A stretch of DNA of 63,752 nt, the filler included, from Octopus bimaculoides (lineage: Eukaryota), in assembly GCF_001194135.2 (NCBI RefSeq). It is 5 parts of 5 records of this genome, joined end to end, with 100 filler letters (N's around TTAATTAATTAA, not from the genome) between each part and the next. Parts side by side here need not be neighbours in the genome. Positions count along the whole stretch, not along the records: positions 17,072 to 44,608 come from NC_068996.1; 4 more parts are not named here. One strand, written 5' to 3'. The position numbers were made by a program, and so were the translations under genes. The notes below the pieces were generated by a model that had not been told where the DNA came from, made no database searches, and saw only the letters and a list, made by a program, of their open reading frames with translations. How positions within the stretch are numbered: position 1 is the stretch's first letter; each line of letters begins with the position of its first letter. Below are positions 7,630 through 22,947 of this stretch, piece by piece.

Positions 7630-9050
7630 ATCATCATCATCATCATCAGTAATTAATATCTCCATAGTTTCCAACCTTTGCTCAAACCTCTAGTATAAAT
7701 TAATAGCCATTTCCGACCCTCCAGCAAACTCCTAACCCCAACATATACATTCACAAAGTAACCACCAACGCTAACAACAGCAACAACAACAACAACAATA
7801 GCGCAACACCGCCAACAACTACATAAAGAATCGCAATAGGAACACTATCATGACGAACACGACTAAAGTCTCCAAGACGTTCATTTTATATTAGGTGTTA
7901 TCAAGAGGATACACATTAACATCACCTAACAACGAAAACACCACGAATGCCATAATCATTATCCTCATTATCACAACAACCACCACCGGTGCCAACGCCC
8001 TCCTCAGCCGTTTTTCCTGCTCATCATCATTCACCCACACCCATCTTCACCATCATCGCTGCTATTCTTTAAAACCGTAGCCATTATCACCAGGACCGAA
8101 TAGTTAGCGCTTTCTCCTTCGTTTCCTTTTTGTTTTTGAGGTCACAAAAAGTTCATCCCACTCTAATTTTAACTAACACAGATGCATTGTCGTTTTACAT
8201 TAGATTCTCTCAAATTGTATTACTTTATACTATACACAGTTATATTTATAAAATCTTATATATTTATATAACAGTGTATGCTGTATTTTAATATATTACA
8301 CTTGGGCAATCAGCTCGCAGAATCGTTATCATTCCAGATAAAATGTTTAGCAGACACTTCTCCTGGCATAACTTTCTGAGTTCTAGTCTCACCGAGGTTA
8401 TCTTAGTCTTTCAATGTTTTGGGATCGATAAAATTAAAGTCAATTGAGCACTAGGGCGGATGTTATCAACGAGAACCTACCTACGAAAAACTTTAGGCCT
8501 TCAGCCATTATTAGAAAGAATAATATATTAGACTAATGTATTAGACTTTCAGAGTTCAAATGCCGCTGGGTAAGACGTCGTCCTTCATTCTTTTGGGGTC
8601 GATTAAATAAGTACCGGTTGAGTGCTAGGGTCGATGTAATCGACTTCGACTTACCTTCTCCTCCAAATTTGCTGGTCTTGTTCCAAAGTTTGATATCAAC
8701 AATAAATTAGACTTGAAAGACTATGTGCATCAGGTTCGATTTGGTTCTTAACTGGTAATTTATCAGGCCCTGCTCAACTTAGTGAGAAAAGGAAACGCAT
8801 GTGTACCAAATATATTAAAATTGAATCTCTAAAGTGACAGAAGAGTTTCTCATAAAGCAGAACTATATTTAACAGAAAGCAGAACTATAGTTCTTTGAAC
8901 AAAAGAAGACTTACCTAACTGATTAACCGAATGCAATTTGGAAATATCAGATTTTAAACTTTGTACGTACGCTGACAACATCGTTTTTGTTACTGCTGTT
9001 TCGCTGACTGACGGATTGCTGATGTGTAGAGTCAATACAGCTTATATCTC

Positions 9051-9290
9051 AGGGTCGCAAGCTGGTAGAATCGTTAGCACGCCGGGCGAAATGCCTAGCG
9101 GTATTTCGTATGCCGTTACGTTCTGTGTTGAAATTCCGCCAAGGTCGACTATTCCTTTCATCCCCTCGAGGTCGATTAAATAAGTACCAGTTACGCACTA
9201 GGGTCGATGTTATCGACTTGATCCCCTTGTCTGTCATTGTTTGTGTCCTCTGTATTTAGCCCCTTGAGGACAATAAAGAAATAAATATAA
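9051..9290 (+). mobile_element. tRNA-derived SINE, family B
   Basis: A-box-like TGGTAGAATCGTTAGC, B-box-like GTTGAAATTCC and body AAGTACCAGTTACGCACTAGGGTCGATG; near-complete homologue in reverse at 43564-43796. Confidence 0.85.
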
Positions 9291-9654
9291 CATATATGGA
9301 AAGGCGACAATAATAAGAAATTAATGCCCAACTGAGAGAGAGAGAGAAAGTAATTGATAGAGAAATGGCTTTGGACTAAAGTCACCCTCGGTGAAGAAAT
9401 TTGGGTGGGAGTGTCTCTGTCTTTTTGCAAATAAAAATTTACGAATGTGGCGTATGTCATATCTTACTAAGTATTTATTAATGTTAGGTTTCATATTTTA
9501 ACGGGTCATTTTCATTTGAGTTCACTTTTATAAACATTCATCAGGAAACCTAATTTAGTTCATAGCATACGGTCCCACACGATTTAATTCAAGTTTTCGT
9601 TAAAATTACATTATATGCTTTTCGGTGCTTGATTAAATAATTGTACTCTAAAAA

Positions 9655-9815
9655 ACAACAATGATGATGATAATGATGATGATGAGGAGGAGAAGGAGGA
9701 GGGGAAGAATGACGTGGAGGAAGAGGAGGAGGACGACGACGACGAAGAGGAGGGAGAGAGGAATAAGGAGGATGGAACAGCAACTACCACTACTACTACT
9801 GCTACTACTACTACG

Positions 9816-9889
<74 letters not shown>

Positions 9890-9946
9890 TAATAATAATA
9901 ATATGAGGTACAACAATAACAAGAATGATACTAATAAAGATGATGG

Positions 9947-10022
<76 letters not shown>
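9655..10022. repeat. Compound trinucleotide array (GAT/GAG/ACT/AAT/GAT)
   Basis: Direct inspection. Confidence 0.95.
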
Positions 10023-10023
<1 letters not shown>

Positions 10024-11000
10024 AAATAACGTTTTGTACATAAGAAGGAGATCGATAACTGAGTCATTGTGTAAACACTTTATGTAATGTGTTGACAAAT
10101 AAAGCACAATGATTAATGTGTACAGTCAACACACTCAAACTGTGATGTGTTTGTTTAGTAAAGACGTCGAGTGATGCTTGCAAATGCTGGCGTGAACATT
10201 TCGATTGTAAATGCCGAGAGTAAATGTTTTAGCGAATGTATAATACAGGAACGTTTACATTGAGTGACCCGATATTTAATGAAATAAAATGATACATAGT
10301 TCAGCCCTTCCCTCTCTTCACAAAAAAAGTTATTTGTATTTTTGTTTTTTTCTTTCGCTGCTTATTATTATATTTATTTTTTTTTAGTTTAGTGTTTCAC
10401 ACACTTGTTAATGAAGTAAAAAGAAAATTTTAAAAAAAGAAAGAAATAATACGCATGATGATTACGAATTTATTTTCTCATAATCATTTCTAACGTAGAA
10501 TGAAGATCATACGCTGTGAAAAAAGTTCAATATAAATGGGCTGAATTTGTGACTTGTTTCATATATTGTTTTCGTTGTTAAGCCTTAGTTGAATGCTCCC
10601 TCAAGAATGAAACATAAAAGGTGGTCTTAACCGGATTTGGAATTAGAATATGATGCGTTGAAATGAAATAATGAATAATATTTGGCTCAGACCTTCACAG
10701 ATACATTAATATCAGACGTAGGACTGGGTGGCTCTGAGGAGATAATCTTATAACCCAGAGGTTATTATGTAAACTAACTCATATTTAGATTACAATGTTA
10801 TAATTTTATATTGTCATGGAGTATACAGAGATAAAGCTGTTTATTTACATTGAGAATAATGAAATGAGACATCTACAACACGTACAAATTAACAATCTTT
10901 CGTCCATAACAGACAAAATTTATTTTCTGTTAGTTGTACGTAGAAACGAAAGTTTGATGCAATTTGTTATGTGTGAACTTCACAACAAGCTCAATGTGAG

Positions 11001-11090
11001 CTCTGATTGGTTGTATGCAAATGAGTTCATTACTGGGGTCCGGAAGTTTTGTGGGGAAAAAATTTCGCTGCCCGGGCAGCATCCAGTCGT
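11001..11090 (+). promoter_or_regulatory. Candidate promoter cluster (CCAAT, octamer, ETS, palindrome, Inr-like)
   Basis: ATTGG 11006-11010, ATGCAAAT 11015-11022, CCGGAAGT 11040-11047, perfect 14-bp palindrome GCTGCCCGGGCAGC 11067-11080 and CCAGTC 11083-11088, inside a roughly 2 kb repeat-poor island. Confidence 0.4.
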
Positions 11091-12471
11091 GTCACTTTCT
11101 TCAATTTAGTAGTATAGAAGCATTTTTTCTTGCTGCTTAAGAAAGGATTTACTCGATAACTACCACAGCGGGTAATGACAATAACTGAAGTTATCGACTT
11201 ATAAGATGACAGATTATCTAAATTTAGAACGGATTAAAGTTTAAATCATTGAGAAAAATGACATATATTACATGTTGTCTTGCCATACCCTGAGAAATAT
11301 TTTATCGACTCAGTATAAATTAATCCGTAAAATTTCCTACAGCAATTTCGTATTGAAAGAAAGGGTGGGTGTAGCGTTTCGTTATTATATTAATTTATAC
11401 AACATAAGGTAAAAATAAAAAGGAAATTGATAACAAAATAGTATTGATAAAATAATGATGTAATTTGAAACGAACTTTTTATTCTTATAAAGCACGAATG
11501 AAAATATAACTATATCGAACTAGAGAAAGCTGGGAATTGAAATGAGTAAAGTTATAACTTCAACGGTGGTTTTTAGAATCCTAATTTCAGTGTGTCATGA
11601 TTATCCCTCACCTAAAAATTCTATGGAGTTATTTCAACAACTCTGCGCTACATGATTTTACAAAAGATATCTAATACATTTTGTTTTCCTATTATCATTT
11701 ATATTATACGAACAATTCAATTAATAGCACAAGTTTTCTTTTAACATTCGCATACTTTTCGTTTGAAAAAATATATATTTAGTATTTGAACTGGAGAAGG
11801 AAAATGGGGAAATGCCAGATTCAACAGACAATACCAGATGTATGTGCCGCGTTTGGTTCGGATCTTATAATTTTCTTGTGGGATTGATTTCCATGGGATC
11901 GACTTTGCATTTTATTCTTGCAAAGTAGACAAAGTAGAGTGTAAGTCAAGTGCTAGAAATGATACCCCCCTCTATTGTGTGTATGTGTGTTGTAATAAAG
12001 AAGTCAAACGAAATAATGCGTGCATCAAATAATGATATTTTGTAAGCATTTAGAACGTTCGTTTCTGATCTGCATGATATAAAATAAGAAATATATCTCT
12101 TACGCAGGATGAAAAAGGACAGTCTTGCGTAAGGGATGTAATTTCTGCAAACATTATACAGTTATGAAACGTACGTATTAATTGATTTCAGAATATGATT
12201 GTTTGCTTTGACTTTATTACTACAAGTTATGGGACCTGATGCCAGTACAAGCTAGTCTTTCCTGACACCACTTATGAAGATATTCTAGCAATGGTCTGAA
12301 GTTGCCTCTTGCTTCTGGCTGTACTAAAAAAATCCTAGTAGCGTGAATCGGTTCTAAGAACGGTAACCTTCGTTCTACATATATATAATATATGTACGTA
12401 TGTATATATATATATATATATATATATNNNNNNNNNNNNNNNNNNNNNNNNNNNNNNNNNNNNNNNNNNNN

Positions 12472-18778: not shown

Positions 18779-19172
18779 CTTCTACCACATGTCTATCGCT
18801 TGTTGGCTGAGTGTCCTATCAATTACATTACAGAGCGCTTGCTATTCCATCTTTTCAAATTAATTACTATAGATTGCTTTCTGCTGTTTTAACTCTATTA
18901 TTTTATCTCCACAAGATAATTTATCAGTCACTAAGAGCTGACCGAATAGACTTATTATACTCTTGTCCAGCTTAACAAAGTCACCTACAGTGAGAAACAC
19001 TCGCGTGAATCAAATTATGAATTAATTGTTGATAATTTCTATGTAAATGTAGGCCTTAATTGTAATGTCTAATATCATTTGCATTAATATTTTAGCGGTT
19101 AATTTATATGTAATTGTTCTTTCATTTTCATTATTTTTGTTTTGCAGAAACGAAAATCTGAAAATAGGAAAA

Positions 19173-20099
19173 ATGCCCTACCTAAACAAAAGAAGCAGCA
19201 CACGGTGCGGTCCGACTGGACGAGGTGGTGTTCTAATTCCACTTGAACCACTGAAGGAGGGACATCGAATTGATCCGCAAGAACGATTCTTCCTAGAAGC
19301 TGCAGAAAAGGGAGACAAGCATACAATGATACGATGTTTGCAAGGCCCGAACCCAGTAAATGTTAATTGTACTAACATGTTAGGTCGATCTGCCATACAA
19401 ATAGCTGTGGACAATGAAAACACAGAAATAGTAGAACTCTTACTCAAACAGGAGGGTGTCAAAATTGGAGATGCAGTACTCTACGCCATCCGTGAAGGTG
19501 TGTATAAGATAGTTGAAATGTTGATTGACCATCCGAGTGTTACCAGGGGTATGCTGGGATCGGATTGGTCTAAAACGAAACACGGAAACGAAGAGAGTTC
19601 AGATTATTCTCCGGATATTTCTCCAGTTATTTTAGCCGCTCATTGTAACCAATTTGAAATTCTTCAGTTATTACTTCTTCGCGGTGCCACCATTGAAAGA
19701 CCACACGAACTGTCTTGTTCTTGTAAGAAATGCCAGGAACAGGTTCACGAAGACAGTCTCCGACATTCTTTGCTGAGAATTCACACTTATAAAGCGTTAG
19801 CTAGTCCTGCGTGGATATCTTTGACAAGTCTCGATCCCATTTTAAGCGCTTTTAAGCTATCGTGGGATCTTGCCAAAAAAGGATTAAAAGAAAATGAATT
19901 CAAGGATTTATATTTCGATTTAGCAATGCAATGCAAACGATTCGCGTGCGATCTATTGGACCAATGTCGGAGCAGTGAAGAGGTAATTGCTGTATTAAAT
20001 AAAGAGACATCTTCAGATGAGGAGGATGAGCCGAGTTCGAGTGGAGAGAAACTTACTTTGGCACGATTGAAATTAGCCCTCAAATATGAACAGAAACAG
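19173..20099 (+). CDS. TRPC: TRPC-family cation channel, first coding exon (ankyrin repeats + TRPC linker domain)
   Basis: Acceptor TTTTGCAG ends at 19147, ATG at 19173, donor CAG|GTAGGT after 20099 (309 codons, phase 0). Ankyrin-like GRSAIQIAVDNENTEIVELLL and SPVILAAHCNQFEILQLLL, Zn motif HELSCSCKKC, YKALASP, DPILSAFKLSW, LARLKLALKYEQKQ. Confidence 0.96.
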
Positions 20100-20799
20100 G
20101 TAGGTGGCTAAAATATTTTGTTTCATTCCTTAATATTTCAACATTCCAATTTTGTAGCATTATGCCAAAATTAGAAATTAATATTTCAACATTTCGTAAA
20201 AATATTTAGTTGCTATTAATTCTGACGTATGACCAAAAATGTTCTTGACATGACCATCTTTCCTTTTTCTCGCCCACTTTTTGTCTTTCAGACATGATAC
20301 TTCTGGATCTAAGTTACCCAATGCATCTTTTTATGATTATTACCTTCGCCTTCGCTAAGGCGGAGGTATTGTTTTCAGTCGAATTTGTTAGTTTTTTTCT
20401 TTGTCTGTGGACAAGATATCTCAAGAACCGCGCGATGGATTCGGATGAAACTTTCAGAGATGTTTGTCCTCATGACTGGCACAGACTGATTAGATTTTGG
20501 GATCGATCCGGATTATTTTTCCGGATTTTTTTCATTTTTGAGAGCGGTCGGGTTCGTTTTTAGTATTCTCGCTTGTGAGAGCAGTCGAGTGTATTTCAGA
20601 TATTCTCATTTTAAAAATCATCTTTGGTTAATCGTTGAGAGGGTATTGGTGTTGCATCGGCTGACGTTTGTGTCACAGGCGGTTTGAGTTGTTTTTTGTC
20701 ATGTTAGACGTGAGTTATAGCGTTAAATATTTGTTTGATTGTTACTGCTCAAATTGTTGCTAGTATTATTTTGAATTGTTTTTTCCCATTGTGGGAAAA

Positions 20800-21843
20800 A
20801 TGGAGAAAACGCCAGCAGGTGGCCACAGTTATGCGGCTGCAACTGGAAAAGGGATAGAAGTGGAAACGCTGGAGGTACGAGAAATAAAGGTTGAACCTCG
20901 AAAAATGAAGGAATGCGAGAAGTTGCTGGAAAGAGACGGAAATACATTGAAATTAACGCCGCCTGTGGAACTAACAACCAATGTAATGAAAAGAACGGTG
21001 ATATATAAGACAATGAAGATAGCAACAAGAAAAATAGAAATAACGACAATAGAGGCTATTGAAGAATGTCTAATGAATATAAAAAGACTAACCGCATTTA
21101 TAACAAGAGGGAGAAAGTACGCTACTGTGGAGGTGTGCTTTGCATCAGAAGAGGAAGCAATTAAGCACTCCGCGGAGGCAATAAAATCAGAAGAATGGCT
21201 ACTTTTGCCAAAGTACTGTGGCAAACGTGTGGCCAGGGTGCGAGTTGGCAAAGTGCCCCCAGAGCAGAAAAAAGTATGGCTGATGACAGCCATAATGTAT
21301 GACATGAATGAGGAGGCTAAGATACTGAAGGCCACAAGAACCCAAAGAGATAACTACTGGGGATATGGAATAGAGTTAACCGTTCAAGCAATAGTGGGAG
21401 ATCTAAACAGAATTGTCGAAGAGATAGTGCTGCCCGATAACGTAAGATTGAGAGTGGTGGTGGAGGGTAGGCCACTTATATGTTATACGTGTGGGGAAAA
21501 CGGTAACATGAAAGTGAGGTGCCCCCAGAGGGAACAACAAATAGAGCAGACGGAGAGGCAGGAGAGCACGGACCAGGAGGTACAGGTCGAGATAAAGGAG
21601 AAAGCAACGGAGGAGGAGTTCACGGTGTTTAAAAAGAGAAAGAAAAGTGGGAGAGTGCGCCCTCCGCCTGAGAAGCAGAAAAAGAAGAAAGAAGAAATGG
21701 AAAAGGAGGAGACCAGCAGGAAGGAAGACAAAATGGTGGTGGATAAAATAAGCGAAAAGGAACTTGAGGAGGTGTTCCGGGCGGAGTCGCATGAGGAGGA
21801 AACATTGAGGAGACATTGTCCTTGTTCCGGTGGAGAAGGATAA
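20800..21843 (+). CDS. LINE ORF1/gag-like protein with CCHC-type knuckle (347 aa), TE cargo
   Basis: Open 347-codon frame with SYAAA near the N-terminus, RRM-like hydrophobic segments, VVVEGRPLICYTCGENGNMKVRCP (CX2CX4[H>N]X4C) and a K/E-rich tail; purine-rich and unlike the surrounding intron. Confidence 0.7.
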   Translation: MEKTPAGGHSYAAATGKGIEVETLEVREIKVEPRKMKECEKLLERDGNTLKLTPPVELTTNVMKRTVIYKTMKIATRKIEITTIEAIEECLMNIKRLTAFITRGRKYATVEVCFASEEEAIKHSAEAIKSEEWLLLPKYCGKRVARVRVGKVPPEQKKVWLMTAIMYDMNEEAKILKATRTQRDNYWGYGIELTVQAIVGDLNRIVEEIVLPDNVRLRVVVEGRPLICYTCGENGNMKVRCPQREQQIEQTERQESTDQEVQVEIKEKATEEEFTVFKKRKKSGRVRPPPEKQKKKKEEMEKEETSRKEDKMVVDKISEKELEEVFRAESHEEETLRRHCPCSGGEG

Positions 21844-22201
21844 TTTAGAAACGCGACTGGAGAGACTGTCCAGAGTGGTGGAAGAAAAGAAGAAGGTACC
21901 AGGAGGGGAGCAGGAAAAGAGAAAACAAAGAAAATGAAAATTTCGATGGAATTTTATGACGTACGTAAAAGGCAAAGAAACTGAAAAGAAAATAGTAAAG
22001 TTTAAACATATTATAAGAGTAATGTTGCCCACGGATGTGTATTCCGAGAATGTGAAGGCCATCGTGGTTGACAAAAACACCTACAACAGACTAAAAGACA
22101 TGTGTGGAGAAGGGATTGTCCCGCCAGGAGTGATAGTGGAGTTCGATGAATTGCCACCAGTAGTGGAGCTAAAAGATTTAGAACGTTTCATGAGAGATTA
22201 A
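21809..22201 (+). pseudogene. Frameshifted C-terminal continuation of the ORF1-like cargo
   Basis: The +1 frame is open from 21809 (GDIVLVPVEKDNLETRLERLSRVVEEKKK...), has one TGA at 21935-21937, then continues to MTYVKG...ERFMRD* at 22201. Confidence 0.55.
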
Positions 22202-22627
22202 AAAGGAAAAAAAGTAAGTAAAATTGTTTTATTGAAGAAAGAAGCAAAAAAAGTAAAATTGTTTCGTTTAAAACAAAGAGAGGAAAAACGAGATTAAGAA
22301 AAGCAATAAGACAATAGAACGATTGTAAATAGTTTATATAAACGTTCAAATGATACTGCATGGGATTGGGGGCCCATGCAGCCATTTCATTTTTATATAA
22401 CATCTCATTTTCATTCGTTTTGTGTCTTTTGTCCCCACTGTGGTGTTGTGTCTGTCTTTGTAGTGTTCCTCTGTGTTGTGGCCGTAGTACCAAAATAGAG
22501 AAACATTGGCGGAGGTTTGCGCTCTCTGAGTGCTCTTGTTATTATTATTGTTATTTCAAAGACCAGTAAGATGTGATCTGATAAATATTTAACTGCTAAT
22601 TCTAGCCGATTAAATGACTATGTAGAA

Positions 22628-22947
22628 CAGCGTTTCTCAACCAATTTAATTTATGGACCCCTTTGATTACTATTTTATTTTAGTGGACCCCCATAGCCAT
22701 TCGATGTTTACAAACTAGTTTTATAGACACTTCTTCTGAAATTCCTGTTTTGTGTTACACACATTAACTTGTGTAGGTTGAACTATGAAAAATGTTAGAG
22801 AAAGAAAACTATCTGTTTCTTGTAATACATACGTCTAATGTAAAGTTTTTTCAGGGGTCCTTAAAATATTATTGAGGATCCCCAATTTACTATTTTGTTG
22901 CGTGGATCCCACCAAAATCTTATATGGTCCCCGGTTGAGAACCAATA
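22628..22947. mobile_element. hAT (Charlie-like) MITE
   Basis: Termini CAGCGTTTCTCAACC / GGTTGAGAACCAATA; perfect 8-bp TSD ATGTAGAA at 22620-22627 and 22948-22955. Confidence 0.85.

What the first reader, a model, noticed from the sequence alone, without database searches (positions are those of the whole stretch)
20337..22540. Rolling-circle (Helentron/HINE-type) element ferrying a LINE ORF1/gag-like gene inside the TRPC intron
Seen: a 5' stem-loop containing ACCT[T/C]CGCC, a complementary 3' subterminal TTGGCGGAGGT followed by a small hairpin, T-rich flanks and no TSD. Known: this is the terminal architecture of Helentrons and their non-autonomous HINE/DINE-1 derivatives, which are usually short and non-coding. 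Seen: between the ends lies 1.8 kb with a 347-codon open ORF (SYAAA, RRM-like core, CX2CX4NX4C knuckle), an A-rich tract and a GT-rich 3' region, with no RT, endonuclease or RepHel. Inference: a chimeric family in which a DNA rolling-circle vehicle amplifies a retroelement RNA-binding/chaperone gene, possibly maintained as cargo or on the way to domestication. It is in sense orientation about 240 bp after the exon A donor.
Basis: partly seen in the sequence, partly recalled or inferred. Interest (0 to 1): 0.8.

Follow-up and report, generated by a model that had tools for sequence, protein, structure and literature searches.

The report
LINE ORF1-only retroelement nested in HINE-like repeat
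The interval is two octopus transposons, one inside the other: a decayed copy of a LINE-derived element that keeps only the ORF1 gene, inserted into a very abundant short repeat with Helentron-like ends. It is not a rolling-circle element carrying a gene as cargo.

Summary
The 5' hairpin, the 3' GGCGGAGGT plus small hairpin, the 347-codon ORF with a CX2CX4NX4C knuckle, and the lack of RT, EN or RepHel are all present. The interval holds two elements.

- **Outer element, "S".** About 355 bp (20336-20655 plus 22506-22540), non-coding, HINE/DINE-1-like ends. Thousands of copies exist, and nearly all read straight from 20655 to 22506.
- **Inner element.** 20656-22505, a decayed ORF1-only derivative of an L1/Tx1-like LINE. 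Its protein models as two RRMs plus a zinc knuckle. In Argonauta and O. sinensis the same ORF sits directly upstream of an APE-RT ORF2. The window copy has private stops, a frameshift and a broken knuckle. It is bracketed by an imperfect 15-bp repeat of S sequence, the length of the perfect target duplication of the Argonauta LINE.

No other copy with S's 5' 300 nt plus the ORF was found, so rolling-circle co-mobilisation is not supported.

One result is unexpected. About 45 ORF-element copies end in S's last 35 nt, and two or three begin with a 25-32 nt S-derived leader. This fits retro-copying of a composite source. The result is a nested insertion that seeded a chimeric retro-subfamily, of modest interest.

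The parts
19065..20101 (+). Context only: TRPC-type coding exon (ankyrin repeats plus TRP_2). A GT donor follows at 20102.
   Evidence: Pfam TRP_2 at 1.8e-25 and Ank_2 at 7e-12; sequence.
20336..20655 (+). 5' part of the outer short element S, which is very high copy, non-coding and HINE-like.
   Evidence: Depth is 0.3-1.1 million k-mer depth against 53 for single copy, and about 1,250-2,440 reads at roughly 0.7x coverage. Matches of other copies start at 20336/20337. A second copy sits in O. sinensis locus L004.
20342..20367 (+). 5' subterminal repeat ACCTTCGCC plus its adjacent complementary inverted repeat GGCGGAGGT, forming the 5' hairpin.
   Evidence: strand folding gives -10.7 kcal/mol, z = -4.75. 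The motif count is far above chance.
20610..20619 (+). TATA-like TTTTAAAAAT inside S, about 30 nt upstream of where the S-derived leader of related ORF-element copies begins (about 20640). Its role as a promoter is inferred.
   Evidence: Sequence; leader start taken. No transcript evidence was obtained.
20656..20670 (+). 5' copy of the duplicated S target (ATCGGCTGACGTTTG). It matches the 3' copy at 12 of 15 positions. Relatives carry the canonical CTTGGCGGAGGTTTG here.
   Evidence: P = 2.5e-5 for 12 or more of 15. One search gives the other letters at 20656, 20658, 20662 and 20665.
20671..22505 (+). Inserted ORF1-only LINE derivative: 5' UTR, ORF1, 3' UTR, ending ...GAGAAAC(A). This copy is decayed.
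   Evidence: Homology to copies in L001, L002, L003 and L006 spans 20735-22504 only. Relatives align from about 20668.
20800..21843 (+). ORF1, N-terminal 347 codons. It holds the SYAAA motif, two RRM-like domains (about residues 40-130 and 140-225), a degenerate knuckle CX2CX4NX4C (21481-21522) and a long helix. It ends at a private TAA at 21841.
   Evidence: AlphaFold pLDDT is 80.9. Foldseek matches tandem RRMs with probability 1.0. Relatives have CCHC. Most relatives read A at 21841.
21947..22201 (+). C-terminal domain of the same ORF1, now in another frame and preceded by an in-frame TGA at 21935.
   Evidence: P0002 joins both parts; tblastn gives 76% identity in frame 2. The domain is conserved in the ORF1 of full LINEs (P0011, P0032).
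22202..22505 (+). 3' UTR of the insert: an A-rich tract, a conserved hairpin at 22357-22382, a GT-rich tail and the terminal ACCAAAATAGAGAAAC(A).
   Evidence: Hairpin z = -3.3. The last 100 nt are 5-20 times more abundant than the body. The terminal motif is shared with the LINE 3' ends in L004 and L005.
22506..22540 (+). 3' part of S: the 3' subterminal repeat GGCGGAGGT (22508-16), the palindrome GCGCTC-TCT-GAGTGC (22519-33) and the end ...CTCTTGTT. The first 14 nt form the 3' copy of the target duplication.
   Evidence: Joints 20655 to 22506 and match ends at 22540. The same 35 nt follow the 3' end of about 45 other ORF-element copies.

Best explanation
The interval holds two transposable elements of an Octopus genome, one nested in the other.

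**Outer element (S).** It is about 355 bp, non-coding and present in thousands of copies. Its ends have the Helentron-associated (HINE/DINE-1-like) layout: a 5' subterminal repeat with an adjacent inverted repeat, then a 3' subterminal repeat followed by a small palindrome, with T-rich flanks.

**Inner element.** It is a 1.85-kb copy of an octopod family made of 5' UTR, ORF1 and 3' UTR only. The family derives from an L1/Tx1-like LINE whose ORF1 has two RRMs, a CCHC knuckle and a C-terminal domain.

**How it got there (inferred).** A LINE ORF2 protein acting in trans inserted it into S's 3' subterminal repeat by target-primed reverse transcription. This duplicated 14-15 bp of S.

**State of this copy (shown).** It has since decayed: knuckle His to Asn, a private TAA, a frameshift and a TGA. 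It is neither cargo maintained by S nor a domesticated gene.

**What happened next (inferred).** A composite of this kind, either this locus or a paralogue, was transcribed from a start inside S about 30 nt downstream of a TATA-like box, through to S's end. Those RNAs were retro-copied. That produced a subfamily of roughly 50 copies that carry S's last 35 nt at the 3' end. When full length, they also carry a 25-32 nt S leader at the 5' end, but never S's first 300 nt.
For: **S is normally uninterrupted.**
- The dominant joint is 20655 to 22506, with one C or T between the two sides, in raw reads and contigs of four DNA runs.
- S depth is hundreds to thousands of times single copy, against 10-100 times for the ORF part.

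**The insert has its own ends.**
- Homology with copies in four other loci stops at 22504 and starts after 20668-20735.
- The copy in L003 is 5'-truncated.
- The 3' end is over-represented relative to the body.

**The flanking repeat fits a target duplication.**
- The two copies match at 12 of 15 positions, P = 2.5e-5.
- The full Argonauta LINE has a perfect 15-bp target duplication and the same type of 3' end, GCGAATAAAGAAAT.

**The ORF is a LINE ORF1.**
- P0032 (527 aa) lies 38 bp upstream of an 812-aa ORF2 with Exo_endo_phos, RVT_1 and zf-RVT domains.
- That ORF2's best solved relative is human L1 ORF2p, E = 4e-42.
- The same arrangement occurs in O. sinensis locus L004.
- In L002 a gag-like fragment directly abuts an APE domain.
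- The AlphaFold model (pLDDT 81) matches tandem RRM proteins.

**ORF1-only structure recurs.** It is seen in the window, L001, L002 units 1-3, L003 and L006.

**This copy is decayed**.

**A chimeric retro-subfamily exists.**
- At least 8 distinct contigs per run, about 45 copy-equivalents, run from the insert's 3' end into 22506-22540 and diverge at about 22540.
- The same kind of contig occurs in two other Octopus species.
- Two or three loci begin with (AGGAAG)TTGGTGTTGCCTTGGCGGAGGTTTG, preceded by the 3' end of another unit and not by S.

**The junction is not an assembly artefact.** An independent contig spans 20604-21028 with one mismatch.
Against: - The 5' copy of the duplication differs at 3 of 15 positions, while the 3' copy and the relatives' copies are canonical. 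That is more change than S's overall divergence would predict.
- Whether further composites with S's 5' part exist could not be excluded. Assembler contigs break inside the high-copy S, and read tables are swamped by S reads.
- The transcription start at about 20640 is inferred from two or three related loci that may be duplicates of one array. RNA-seq was uninformative.
- If retro-copies end exactly at S's 3' end, that end may act as a retrotransposition terminus. This would sit awkwardly with S being a DNA rolling-circle element.
- S's class rests on architecture alone. No Helentron partner was examined.
- The orthologous site in a sister species shows S's 3' end, but not whether the insert is there.
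Confidence: 0.7

Rival explanations
1. The whole composite (S ends plus ORF) is one family that a Helentron transposase moves as DNA by rolling circle, with the ORF1 gene as captured cargo.
For: The ends have the HINE layout. About 45 copies join the ORF element's 3' end to S's terminal 35 nt and stop matching exactly at S's end. Composites carrying S's 5' part could be under-counted, because contigs break inside S.
Against: - The canonical S is uninterrupted in thousands of copies.
- Depth over 20656-20666 is near single copy.
- The two or three relatives that reach the 5' end have only 25-32 nt of S, preceded by another unit's 3' end.
- 5'-truncated copies and 3' over-representation are signs of reverse transcription.
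- The insert is bracketed by a 15-bp repeat of the kind made by the family's own LINE.
- The ORF here is broken.
Confidence: 0.06
2. The LINE family, or this subfamily, is site-specific for S's 3' subterminal repeat, as Tx1L is for Tx1D in Xenopus. In that case the many ORF-to-S 3' junctions are independent insertions into different S copies.
For: The ORF2 is L1/Tx1-like with a zf-RVT domain. Many copies share the identical 3' junction. Units pile up head-to-tail at precise junctions.
Against: - With S's 3' end left out of the reference, only one contig and no reads join S's 20640-20670 region to an internal point of the body. 5'-truncated insertions into S should give many such joints.
- The full Argonauta LINE has a perfect target duplication in unrelated sequence.
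- The O. sinensis LINE sits in an (ATT)n tract.
- L001, L003 and L006 have other flanks.
- The leader-bearing relatives are not preceded by S.
Confidence: 0.08
3. S is not a rolling-circle element. It is a LINE-dependent retroposon (SINE-like) whose 3' 35 nt are the recognition end it shares with this ORF1-only subfamily. Either S is a deletion derivative of a composite, formed between the two 14-nt repeats, or both use the same tail.
For: - S and about 45 ORF-element copies end at the same nucleotide with the same stem-loop.
- S is followed by (ATT)n or T runs and preceded by (ATT)n.
- A bona fide LINE of the family sits in (ATT)n with an (ATT)n tail.
- A deletion between the two repeats would give exactly the canonical S.
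Against: - No tRNA, 5S or 7SL head was found (ARAGORN and Rfam give nothing).
- The combination of 5' hairpin, 3' repeat and palindrome is the specific HINE signature.
- The conserved family-wide 3' end is ...AAAGAAA(C/T), across genera. The extra 36 nt occur only in this subfamily and begin exactly where an insertion junction would lie.
- S shows no 5'-to-3' depth gradient.
- S's tail has no significant similarity to the unit ends of other subfamilies.
Confidence: 0.12

Closest known systems
HAL1 ('half-L1'), the non-autonomous L1 derivative of mammals that encodes only ORF1p (PMC5753468)
   Same: The layout is 5' UTR, ORF1 and 3' UTR with no ORF2. It recurs in many copies and several subfamilies. 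It is derived from a LINE of the L1 superfamily and is presumed to be moved in trans by ORF2p.
   Different: The ORF1 here is Type I-like (two RRMs plus a CCHC knuckle plus a C-terminal domain), not the coiled-coil/Transposase_22 type. There is no long poly(A); elements end in ...AAAGAAA(C/T). Units are often found in head-to-tail piles. The host is a mollusc.
HINE/DINE-1-like non-autonomous Helentrons (PMC4067079; Cg_HINE of the oyster, PMC7492417)
   Same: The outer element has a 5' subterminal repeat with an adjacent complementary repeat, a 3' subterminal repeat followed by a short palindrome, T-rich flanks, no coding capacity and very high copy number.
   Different: The 3' repeat lies 24 nt from the end, against 38-60 nt in the mite families. 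The flanks are mostly (ATT)n. No Helentron partner was examined. S's 3' end also terminates a set of retro-copies.
5' and 3' transduction, and composite retroelements such as L1 transduction or SVA (my own knowledge of the L1 literature; SVA in PMC3287187, listed)
   Same: Flanking sequence of a source copy is carried into progeny at both ends, creating a chimeric subfamily.
   Different: Here the transduced flanks are the two sides of another transposon's 3' end. Progeny appear to stop at that transposon's own terminus.
Tx1L in Tx1D composite elements of Xenopus (my own knowledge; the Tx1 clade is discussed in PMC5203782)
   Same: An L1/Tx1-superfamily LINE lies inside a short DNA-transposon-like repeat at a defined position.
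   Different: Site specificity was tested here and is not supported.

Membership tests
HINE / DINE-1-like (non-autonomous Helentron): outer element S | 5' subterminal repeat a few nt from the 5' end, with an adjacent complementary inverted repeat | tested here: met
   ACCTTCGCC lies 6 nt from the start and GGCGGAGGT 8 nt further on. The hairpin folds at -10.7 kcal/mol, z = -4.75.
HINE / DINE-1-like (non-autonomous Helentron): outer element S | 3' subterminal repeat complementary to the 5' one, followed by a short palindrome near the 3' end | tested here: met
   GGCGGAGGT lies at 22508-16 (two matches against 0.01 expected). The palindrome at 22519-33 lies 7 nt from the end and is present in the consensus of hundreds of copies. 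Its folding energy alone is not significant.
HINE / DINE-1-like (non-autonomous Helentron): outer element S | Insertion at TT or T-rich sites without target-site duplication | tested here: inconclusive
   Consensus flanks are (ATT)n upstream and T or ATT runs downstream. Two copies were read and show no duplication beyond ATT repeats. Microsatellite flanks hide short duplications.
HINE / DINE-1-like (non-autonomous Helentron): outer element S | An autonomous Helentron (Rep/Helicase/APE) with the same termini in the same genome | not tested
   The 5' junction is near single copy and relatives lack S's first 300 nt. The uninterrupted form dominates. Caveat: contigs break inside S.
LINE ORF1 protein, Type I (RRM plus CCHC) of an L1/Tx1-like LINE | A homologous ORF directly upstream of an APE+RT ORF2 in a full-length element with a target duplication | tested here: met
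   In L005, ORF1 is at 8001-9584 and ORF2 at 9623-12061 (Exo_endo_phos, RVT_1), followed by zf-RVT, with a perfect 15-bp duplication. L004 shows the same arrangement. The ORF2 matches L1 ORF2p at 4e-42.
LINE ORF1 protein, Type I (RRM plus CCHC) of an L1/Tx1-like LINE | At least one RRM fold | tested here: met
   An AlphaFold model (pLDDT 80.9) built on a 30-sequence alignment gives top Foldseek hits to IMP3 RRM12, SFPQ/NONO and hnRNP A1 UP1, with probability up to 1.0. Pfam finds no RRM by sequence.
LINE ORF1 protein, Type I (RRM plus CCHC) of an L1/Tx1-like LINE | CCHC zinc knuckle | tested here: not met
   The window copy reads CX2CX4NX4C, with His replaced by Asn. Relatives have the canonical CCHC (PF00098). 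The family meets this feature; this copy has lost it.
ORF1-only non-autonomous LINE derivative (HAL1-like) | A recurrent structure of 5' UTR, ORF1 and 3' UTR without ORF2 | tested here: met
   Seen in the window, L001, L002 units 1-3, L003 and L006. There is no ORF2 similarity in the window.
ORF1-only non-autonomous LINE derivative (HAL1-like) | 3' end shared with the autonomous LINE | tested here: inconclusive
   The terminal ..GCC.AATAAAGAAA is shared. Alignments of the last 150 nt are matched or exceeded by only 3-8 of 500 shuffles.
SINE | Pol III head derived from tRNA, 5S or 7SL | tested here: not met
   ARAGORN finds no tRNA-like gene and Rfam gives no match at E <= 1 over 20200-23000.
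Site-specific LINE (Tx1L/Tx1D type) | Copies occupy the same target sequence | tested here: not met
   Flanks differ in L001, L003, L004, L005 and L006. Only one contig joins S to an internal point of the body.

The most novel reading that the evidence does not exclude
The 3' subterminal repeat and hairpin of a Helentron-like repeat may serve as the working 3' terminus of retro-copies. A start site inside that repeat may serve as their promoter. An ORF1-only LINE derivative that landed there would then have become a chimeric retro-subfamily of about 50 copies that predates the split of several Octopus species. This would also suggest that the thousands of S copies are themselves moved by the L1/Tx1-like LINE despite their Helentron-like ends. 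S would then be an element with rolling-circle-type architecture that spreads by reverse transcription, or by both routes.
Probability: 0.25. Interest if true: 0.6.

Novelty: new member of a known kind. Interest (0 to 1): 0.3.

Why it matters
As proposed, a DNA rolling-circle vehicle amplifying a retroelement gene would have been a new kind of chimeric mobile element. The evidence points to something more ordinary: one transposon inserted in another.

Three by-products are useful for annotating cephalopod genomes.
- Octopods carry a large family, 465 clusters at 50% identity, of LINE ORF1 sequences with two RRMs and a knuckle. Pfam does not recognise them, and they contaminate gene models (RGS, WD40 and LDL-receptor chimeras).
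- ORF1-only "half-LINE" elements exist outside mammals.
- One such element picked up both of its present ends from a Helentron-like repeat. This gives a concrete case for asking how new retroelement 5' and 3' ends arise.

The copy in the TRPC intron is dead and shows no sign of expression or domestication.

Tried and rejected
- **Pfam on the window ORFs.** Nothing above threshold.
- **AlphaFold with a 7-sequence alignment.** pLDDT was 33, unusable. It was repeated with 30 diverse relatives.
- **PDB sequence search with the family profile.** It matched only the zinc knuckle.
- **Profile search of the word-indexed protein database.** It added almost nothing. A search with the C-terminal domain gave one hit without a contig.
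- **Long representative hits.** They proved to be chimeric gene models, not ORF1-ORF2 fusions.
- **tRNA and Rfam scans of S.** Negative.
- **Motif search in papers.** GGCGGAGGT returned only primer lists.
- **Is S's 5' part a general 5' region of the LINE family?** No similarity above shuffles to the upstream regions of units in L001, L002, L004 or L005.
- **Is the 14-nt repeat or S's tail ancestral to unit 5' ends or unit-unit junctions of other subfamilies?** The visual resemblance (GTTGAGCGGCAG against TTGGCGGAGG) is not above shuffles, so the idea was dropped.
- **RNA-seq.** The ORF body has 0-7 reads per bin in both orientations, and S reads come from both strands. No start site could be read.
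- **Sister-species empty site.** An orthologous contig starts inside S's 3' end, so presence or absence of the insert could not be decided.
- **Assembly artefact.** Rejected, because an independent contig spans the 5' junction.
Full report
**Source and context.** All protein relatives of the ORF come from octopods: Octopus bimaculoides, O. sinensis, O. vulgaris and Argonauta hians. DNA runs of one species hold up to 72% of the sampled words of the interval. The ORF at 19065-20111 carries ankyrin repeats and the TRP_2 domain. It ends at a GT donor after 20101. The finding therefore lies in an intron of a TRPC-type gene, 235 bp past the exon and in the sense orientation.

**Observation.**
- The 5' hairpin pairs ACCTTCGCC (20342-50) with GGCGGAGGT (20359-67). 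It is strong: -10.7 kcal/mol, z = -4.75.
- The same 9-mer recurs at 22508-16, which makes two matches against 0.01 expected.
- The 9-mer is followed by the stem GCGCTC-TCT-GAGTGC. That stem is unremarkable on its own (z = -1.0).
- The ORF at 20800-21843 has 347 codons, SYAAA at residues 10-14 and CYTCGENGNMKVRC at residues 228-241.
- No RT, endonuclease or helicase is encoded in the window.

**Two elements, not one.** Reads and contigs of four DNA runs were laid on 19900-23000.
- 20336-20655 and 22506-22540 are enormously repeated. K-mer depth is 0.3-1.1 million against 53 for the single-copy flank. Read depth is about 1,250-2,440 at roughly 0.7x coverage, taking a genome of about 2.7 Gb from my own knowledge.
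- The stretch between them is only 10-100 times single copy.
- The dominant joint in every run goes from 20655 straight to 22506, with a single C or T between the two sides.
- The consensus before 22506 is GCTAATCGTTGAGAGGACGTTGGTGTTGCC.

The canonical element, which I call S, is therefore about 355 bp and uninterrupted. The window copy has 1,850 bp inserted between ...GTTGC and TTGGCGG.... S occurs with the same consensus in two other Octopus species. A copy in O. sinensis locus L004 carries a different nested insertion.

**What S is.** Its layout matches the published HINE/DINE-1 substructures: 5' subterminal repeat, adjacent complementary repeat, 3' subterminal repeat, palindrome, and T-rich sites without duplication (PMC4067079; PMC7492417).
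- S has no tRNA-like or other Rfam-recognised head.
- Its flanks are mostly (ATT)n and T runs. This fits a TT preference but also hides short duplications.
- No Helentron partner could be looked for.

I file S as HINE-like on architecture only.

**What the insert is.** Copies in L001, L002, L003 and L006 are 70-82% identical in DNA. They share only window 20735-22504 and have no GGCGGAGGT nearby.
- P0002 joins the 347-codon ORF to the small ORF at 21947-22201. The ancestral protein was therefore about 450-470 aa.
- An exhaustive HMMER search finds 465 clusters of relatives.
- With 30 of them as an alignment, AlphaFold gives a confident model (pLDDT 80.9). Its core matches tandem-RRM proteins such as IMP3 RRM12, SFPQ/NONO and hnRNP A1 (Foldseek probability up to 1.0).
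- Relatives have a canonical CCHC knuckle.

This is the Type I ORF1 pattern of L1/Tx1-group LINEs (PMC5203782).

The direct test comes from full-length elements.
- In Argonauta locus L005 the homologue P0032 (8001-9584) is followed 38 bp later by an 812-aa ORF with Exo_endo_phos and RVT_1 domains, then a zf-RVT domain.
- That ORF2's best solved relative is human L1 ORF2p, E = 4e-42 over its full length.
- The element is bounded by a perfect 15-bp duplication, CTTCAACTTATGTTT, and ends ...GCGAATAAAGAAAT.
- O. sinensis locus L004 has the same ORF1-ORF2 arrangement.
- In L002 a gag-like fragment abuts an APE domain.

By contrast, the window copy and those in L001, L002 (units 1-3), L003 and L006 go from ORF1 straight to a conserved 3' UTR. 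This is an ORF1-only family analogous to mammalian HAL1 (PMC5753468).

**State of the window copy.** It is decayed.
- The knuckle histidine is asparagine.
- The TAA at 21841 is private; most relatives read A at that position.
- The frame shifts around 21800-21840.
- A TGA at 21935 interrupts the C-terminal frame.
- RNA-seq shows next to nothing over the body.

There is no sign of maintenance or domestication.

**How it got there.** The insert is bracketed by ATCGGCTGACGTTTG (20656-70) and ATTGGCGGAGGTTTG (22505-19). These match at 12 of 15 positions, P = 2.5e-5. The length equals that of the Argonauta LINE's duplication. A 5'-truncated copy exists in L003, and the 3' end is 5-20 times over-represented. 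Together these point to target-primed reverse transcription into S's 3' subterminal repeat. The three mismatches in the 5' copy remain unexplained.

**An unexpected result.** Laying contigs on 22440-22545 shows at least 8 distinct contigs of single-copy depth per run, about 45 copy-equivalents. They pass from the insert's 3' end into S's last 35 nt and stop matching at about 22540. The same kind of contig occurs in two other species.

At the other end, two or three relatives reach 20646 and read the canonical S letters there (...TTGGTGTTGCCTTGGCGGAGGTTTG|TGTCACAGG). Upstream of that they have ...GCCTAATAAAAGAAATAAGGAAG, which is the 3' end of another unit and not S.

The window's subfamily therefore carries S-derived sequence at both ends but lacks S's first 300 nt.
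- With S's 3' end left out of the reference, only one contig and no reads join S's 20640-20670 to internal points of the body. This argues against repeated site-specific insertion into S.
- Neither S's 5' part nor its tail resembles the ends of other subfamilies above chance.

The simplest account is that a composite like this one was transcribed from inside S and the RNAs were retro-copied. A TATA-like TTTTAAAAAT sits about 30 nt upstream of the leader's start. That start site is inferred, not shown.

The architecture and the ORF's identity are right. The mechanism is not supported. S normally has no cargo, the ORF element moves on its own in many other contexts, and no second copy with S's 5' end plus the ORF was found. 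The limit of this test is that assembler contigs break inside S. A whole-genome search is needed to close the question.

**Rivals kept open.**
- Rolling-circle cargo: 0.06.
- Tx1L/Tx1D-like site specificity: 0.08.
- S is a LINE-dependent retroposon that shares its tail with this subfamily, or a deletion derivative formed between the two 14-nt repeats: 0.12.

Noticed in passing
L002:5327-11430; L006:4492-4900: ORF1-only units of different subfamilies lie head to tail with exact junctions: ...AAAGAAAAC|GTTGAGCAGCAG, ...AATGAAAAC|GTTGAATAGCAG and ...AAAGAAAAC|GTTGAGCGGCAG. In L002 there are four units in a row. The third ends in poly(A), and the fourth is a gag fragment fused to an APE domain. 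Because neighbouring units are divergent, this is not simple tandem duplication. It suggests reverse-transcriptase template jumping or insertion at element ends.
   Followed up: partly
window 21148-21300: A stretch of about 100-150 bp of the ORF (start of the second RRM) is several times more abundant than the rest of the body, up to about 220 reads. Ninety-seven reads leave the window sequence after 21245 with one shared continuation, GAGTAAGGTGCCATCCGAACTGAAACTTTA (agreement 0.91). Another repeat family seems to contain this piece of ORF1.
   Followed up: no
window 22604-22915: A second, unrelated high-copy repeat lies just downstream of S. Its k-mer depth is 0.1-0.3 million, and matches of other copies start at 22645/22652.
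   Followed up: no
L004:14955-15978 (minus strand): An O. sinensis copy of S (83-85% identical) carries a different nested insertion of about 675 bp, flanked by a 10-bp duplication TGGGATCGAT. Its 3' end is followed by (GTT)3(ATT)3.
   Followed up: partly
L004:7720-13380: A LINE of the same family (ORF1 P0011 plus ORF2) sits inside an (ATT)n microsatellite: (ATT)18 upstream and ...AAAAAGAATT(ATT)7 at its 3' end. S is also usually flanked by (ATT)n.
   Followed up: partly
P0007, P0013, P0084 (public gene models): Annotated octopus proteins with RGS, WD40 or LDL-receptor domains include fragments of this ORF1 as exons. P0015 is named 'EPM2A-interacting 1-like'. Because Pfam does not recognise the family, it contaminates gene models.
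   Followed up: partly
window 20508-20534: Most S copies carry extra sequence here (...TGGTACCGGACAAGGATTCTGGATTATTTT) that the window copy lacks. The window has the short tandem TCCGGATTATTTT/TCCGGATTTTTTT instead.
   Followed up: no
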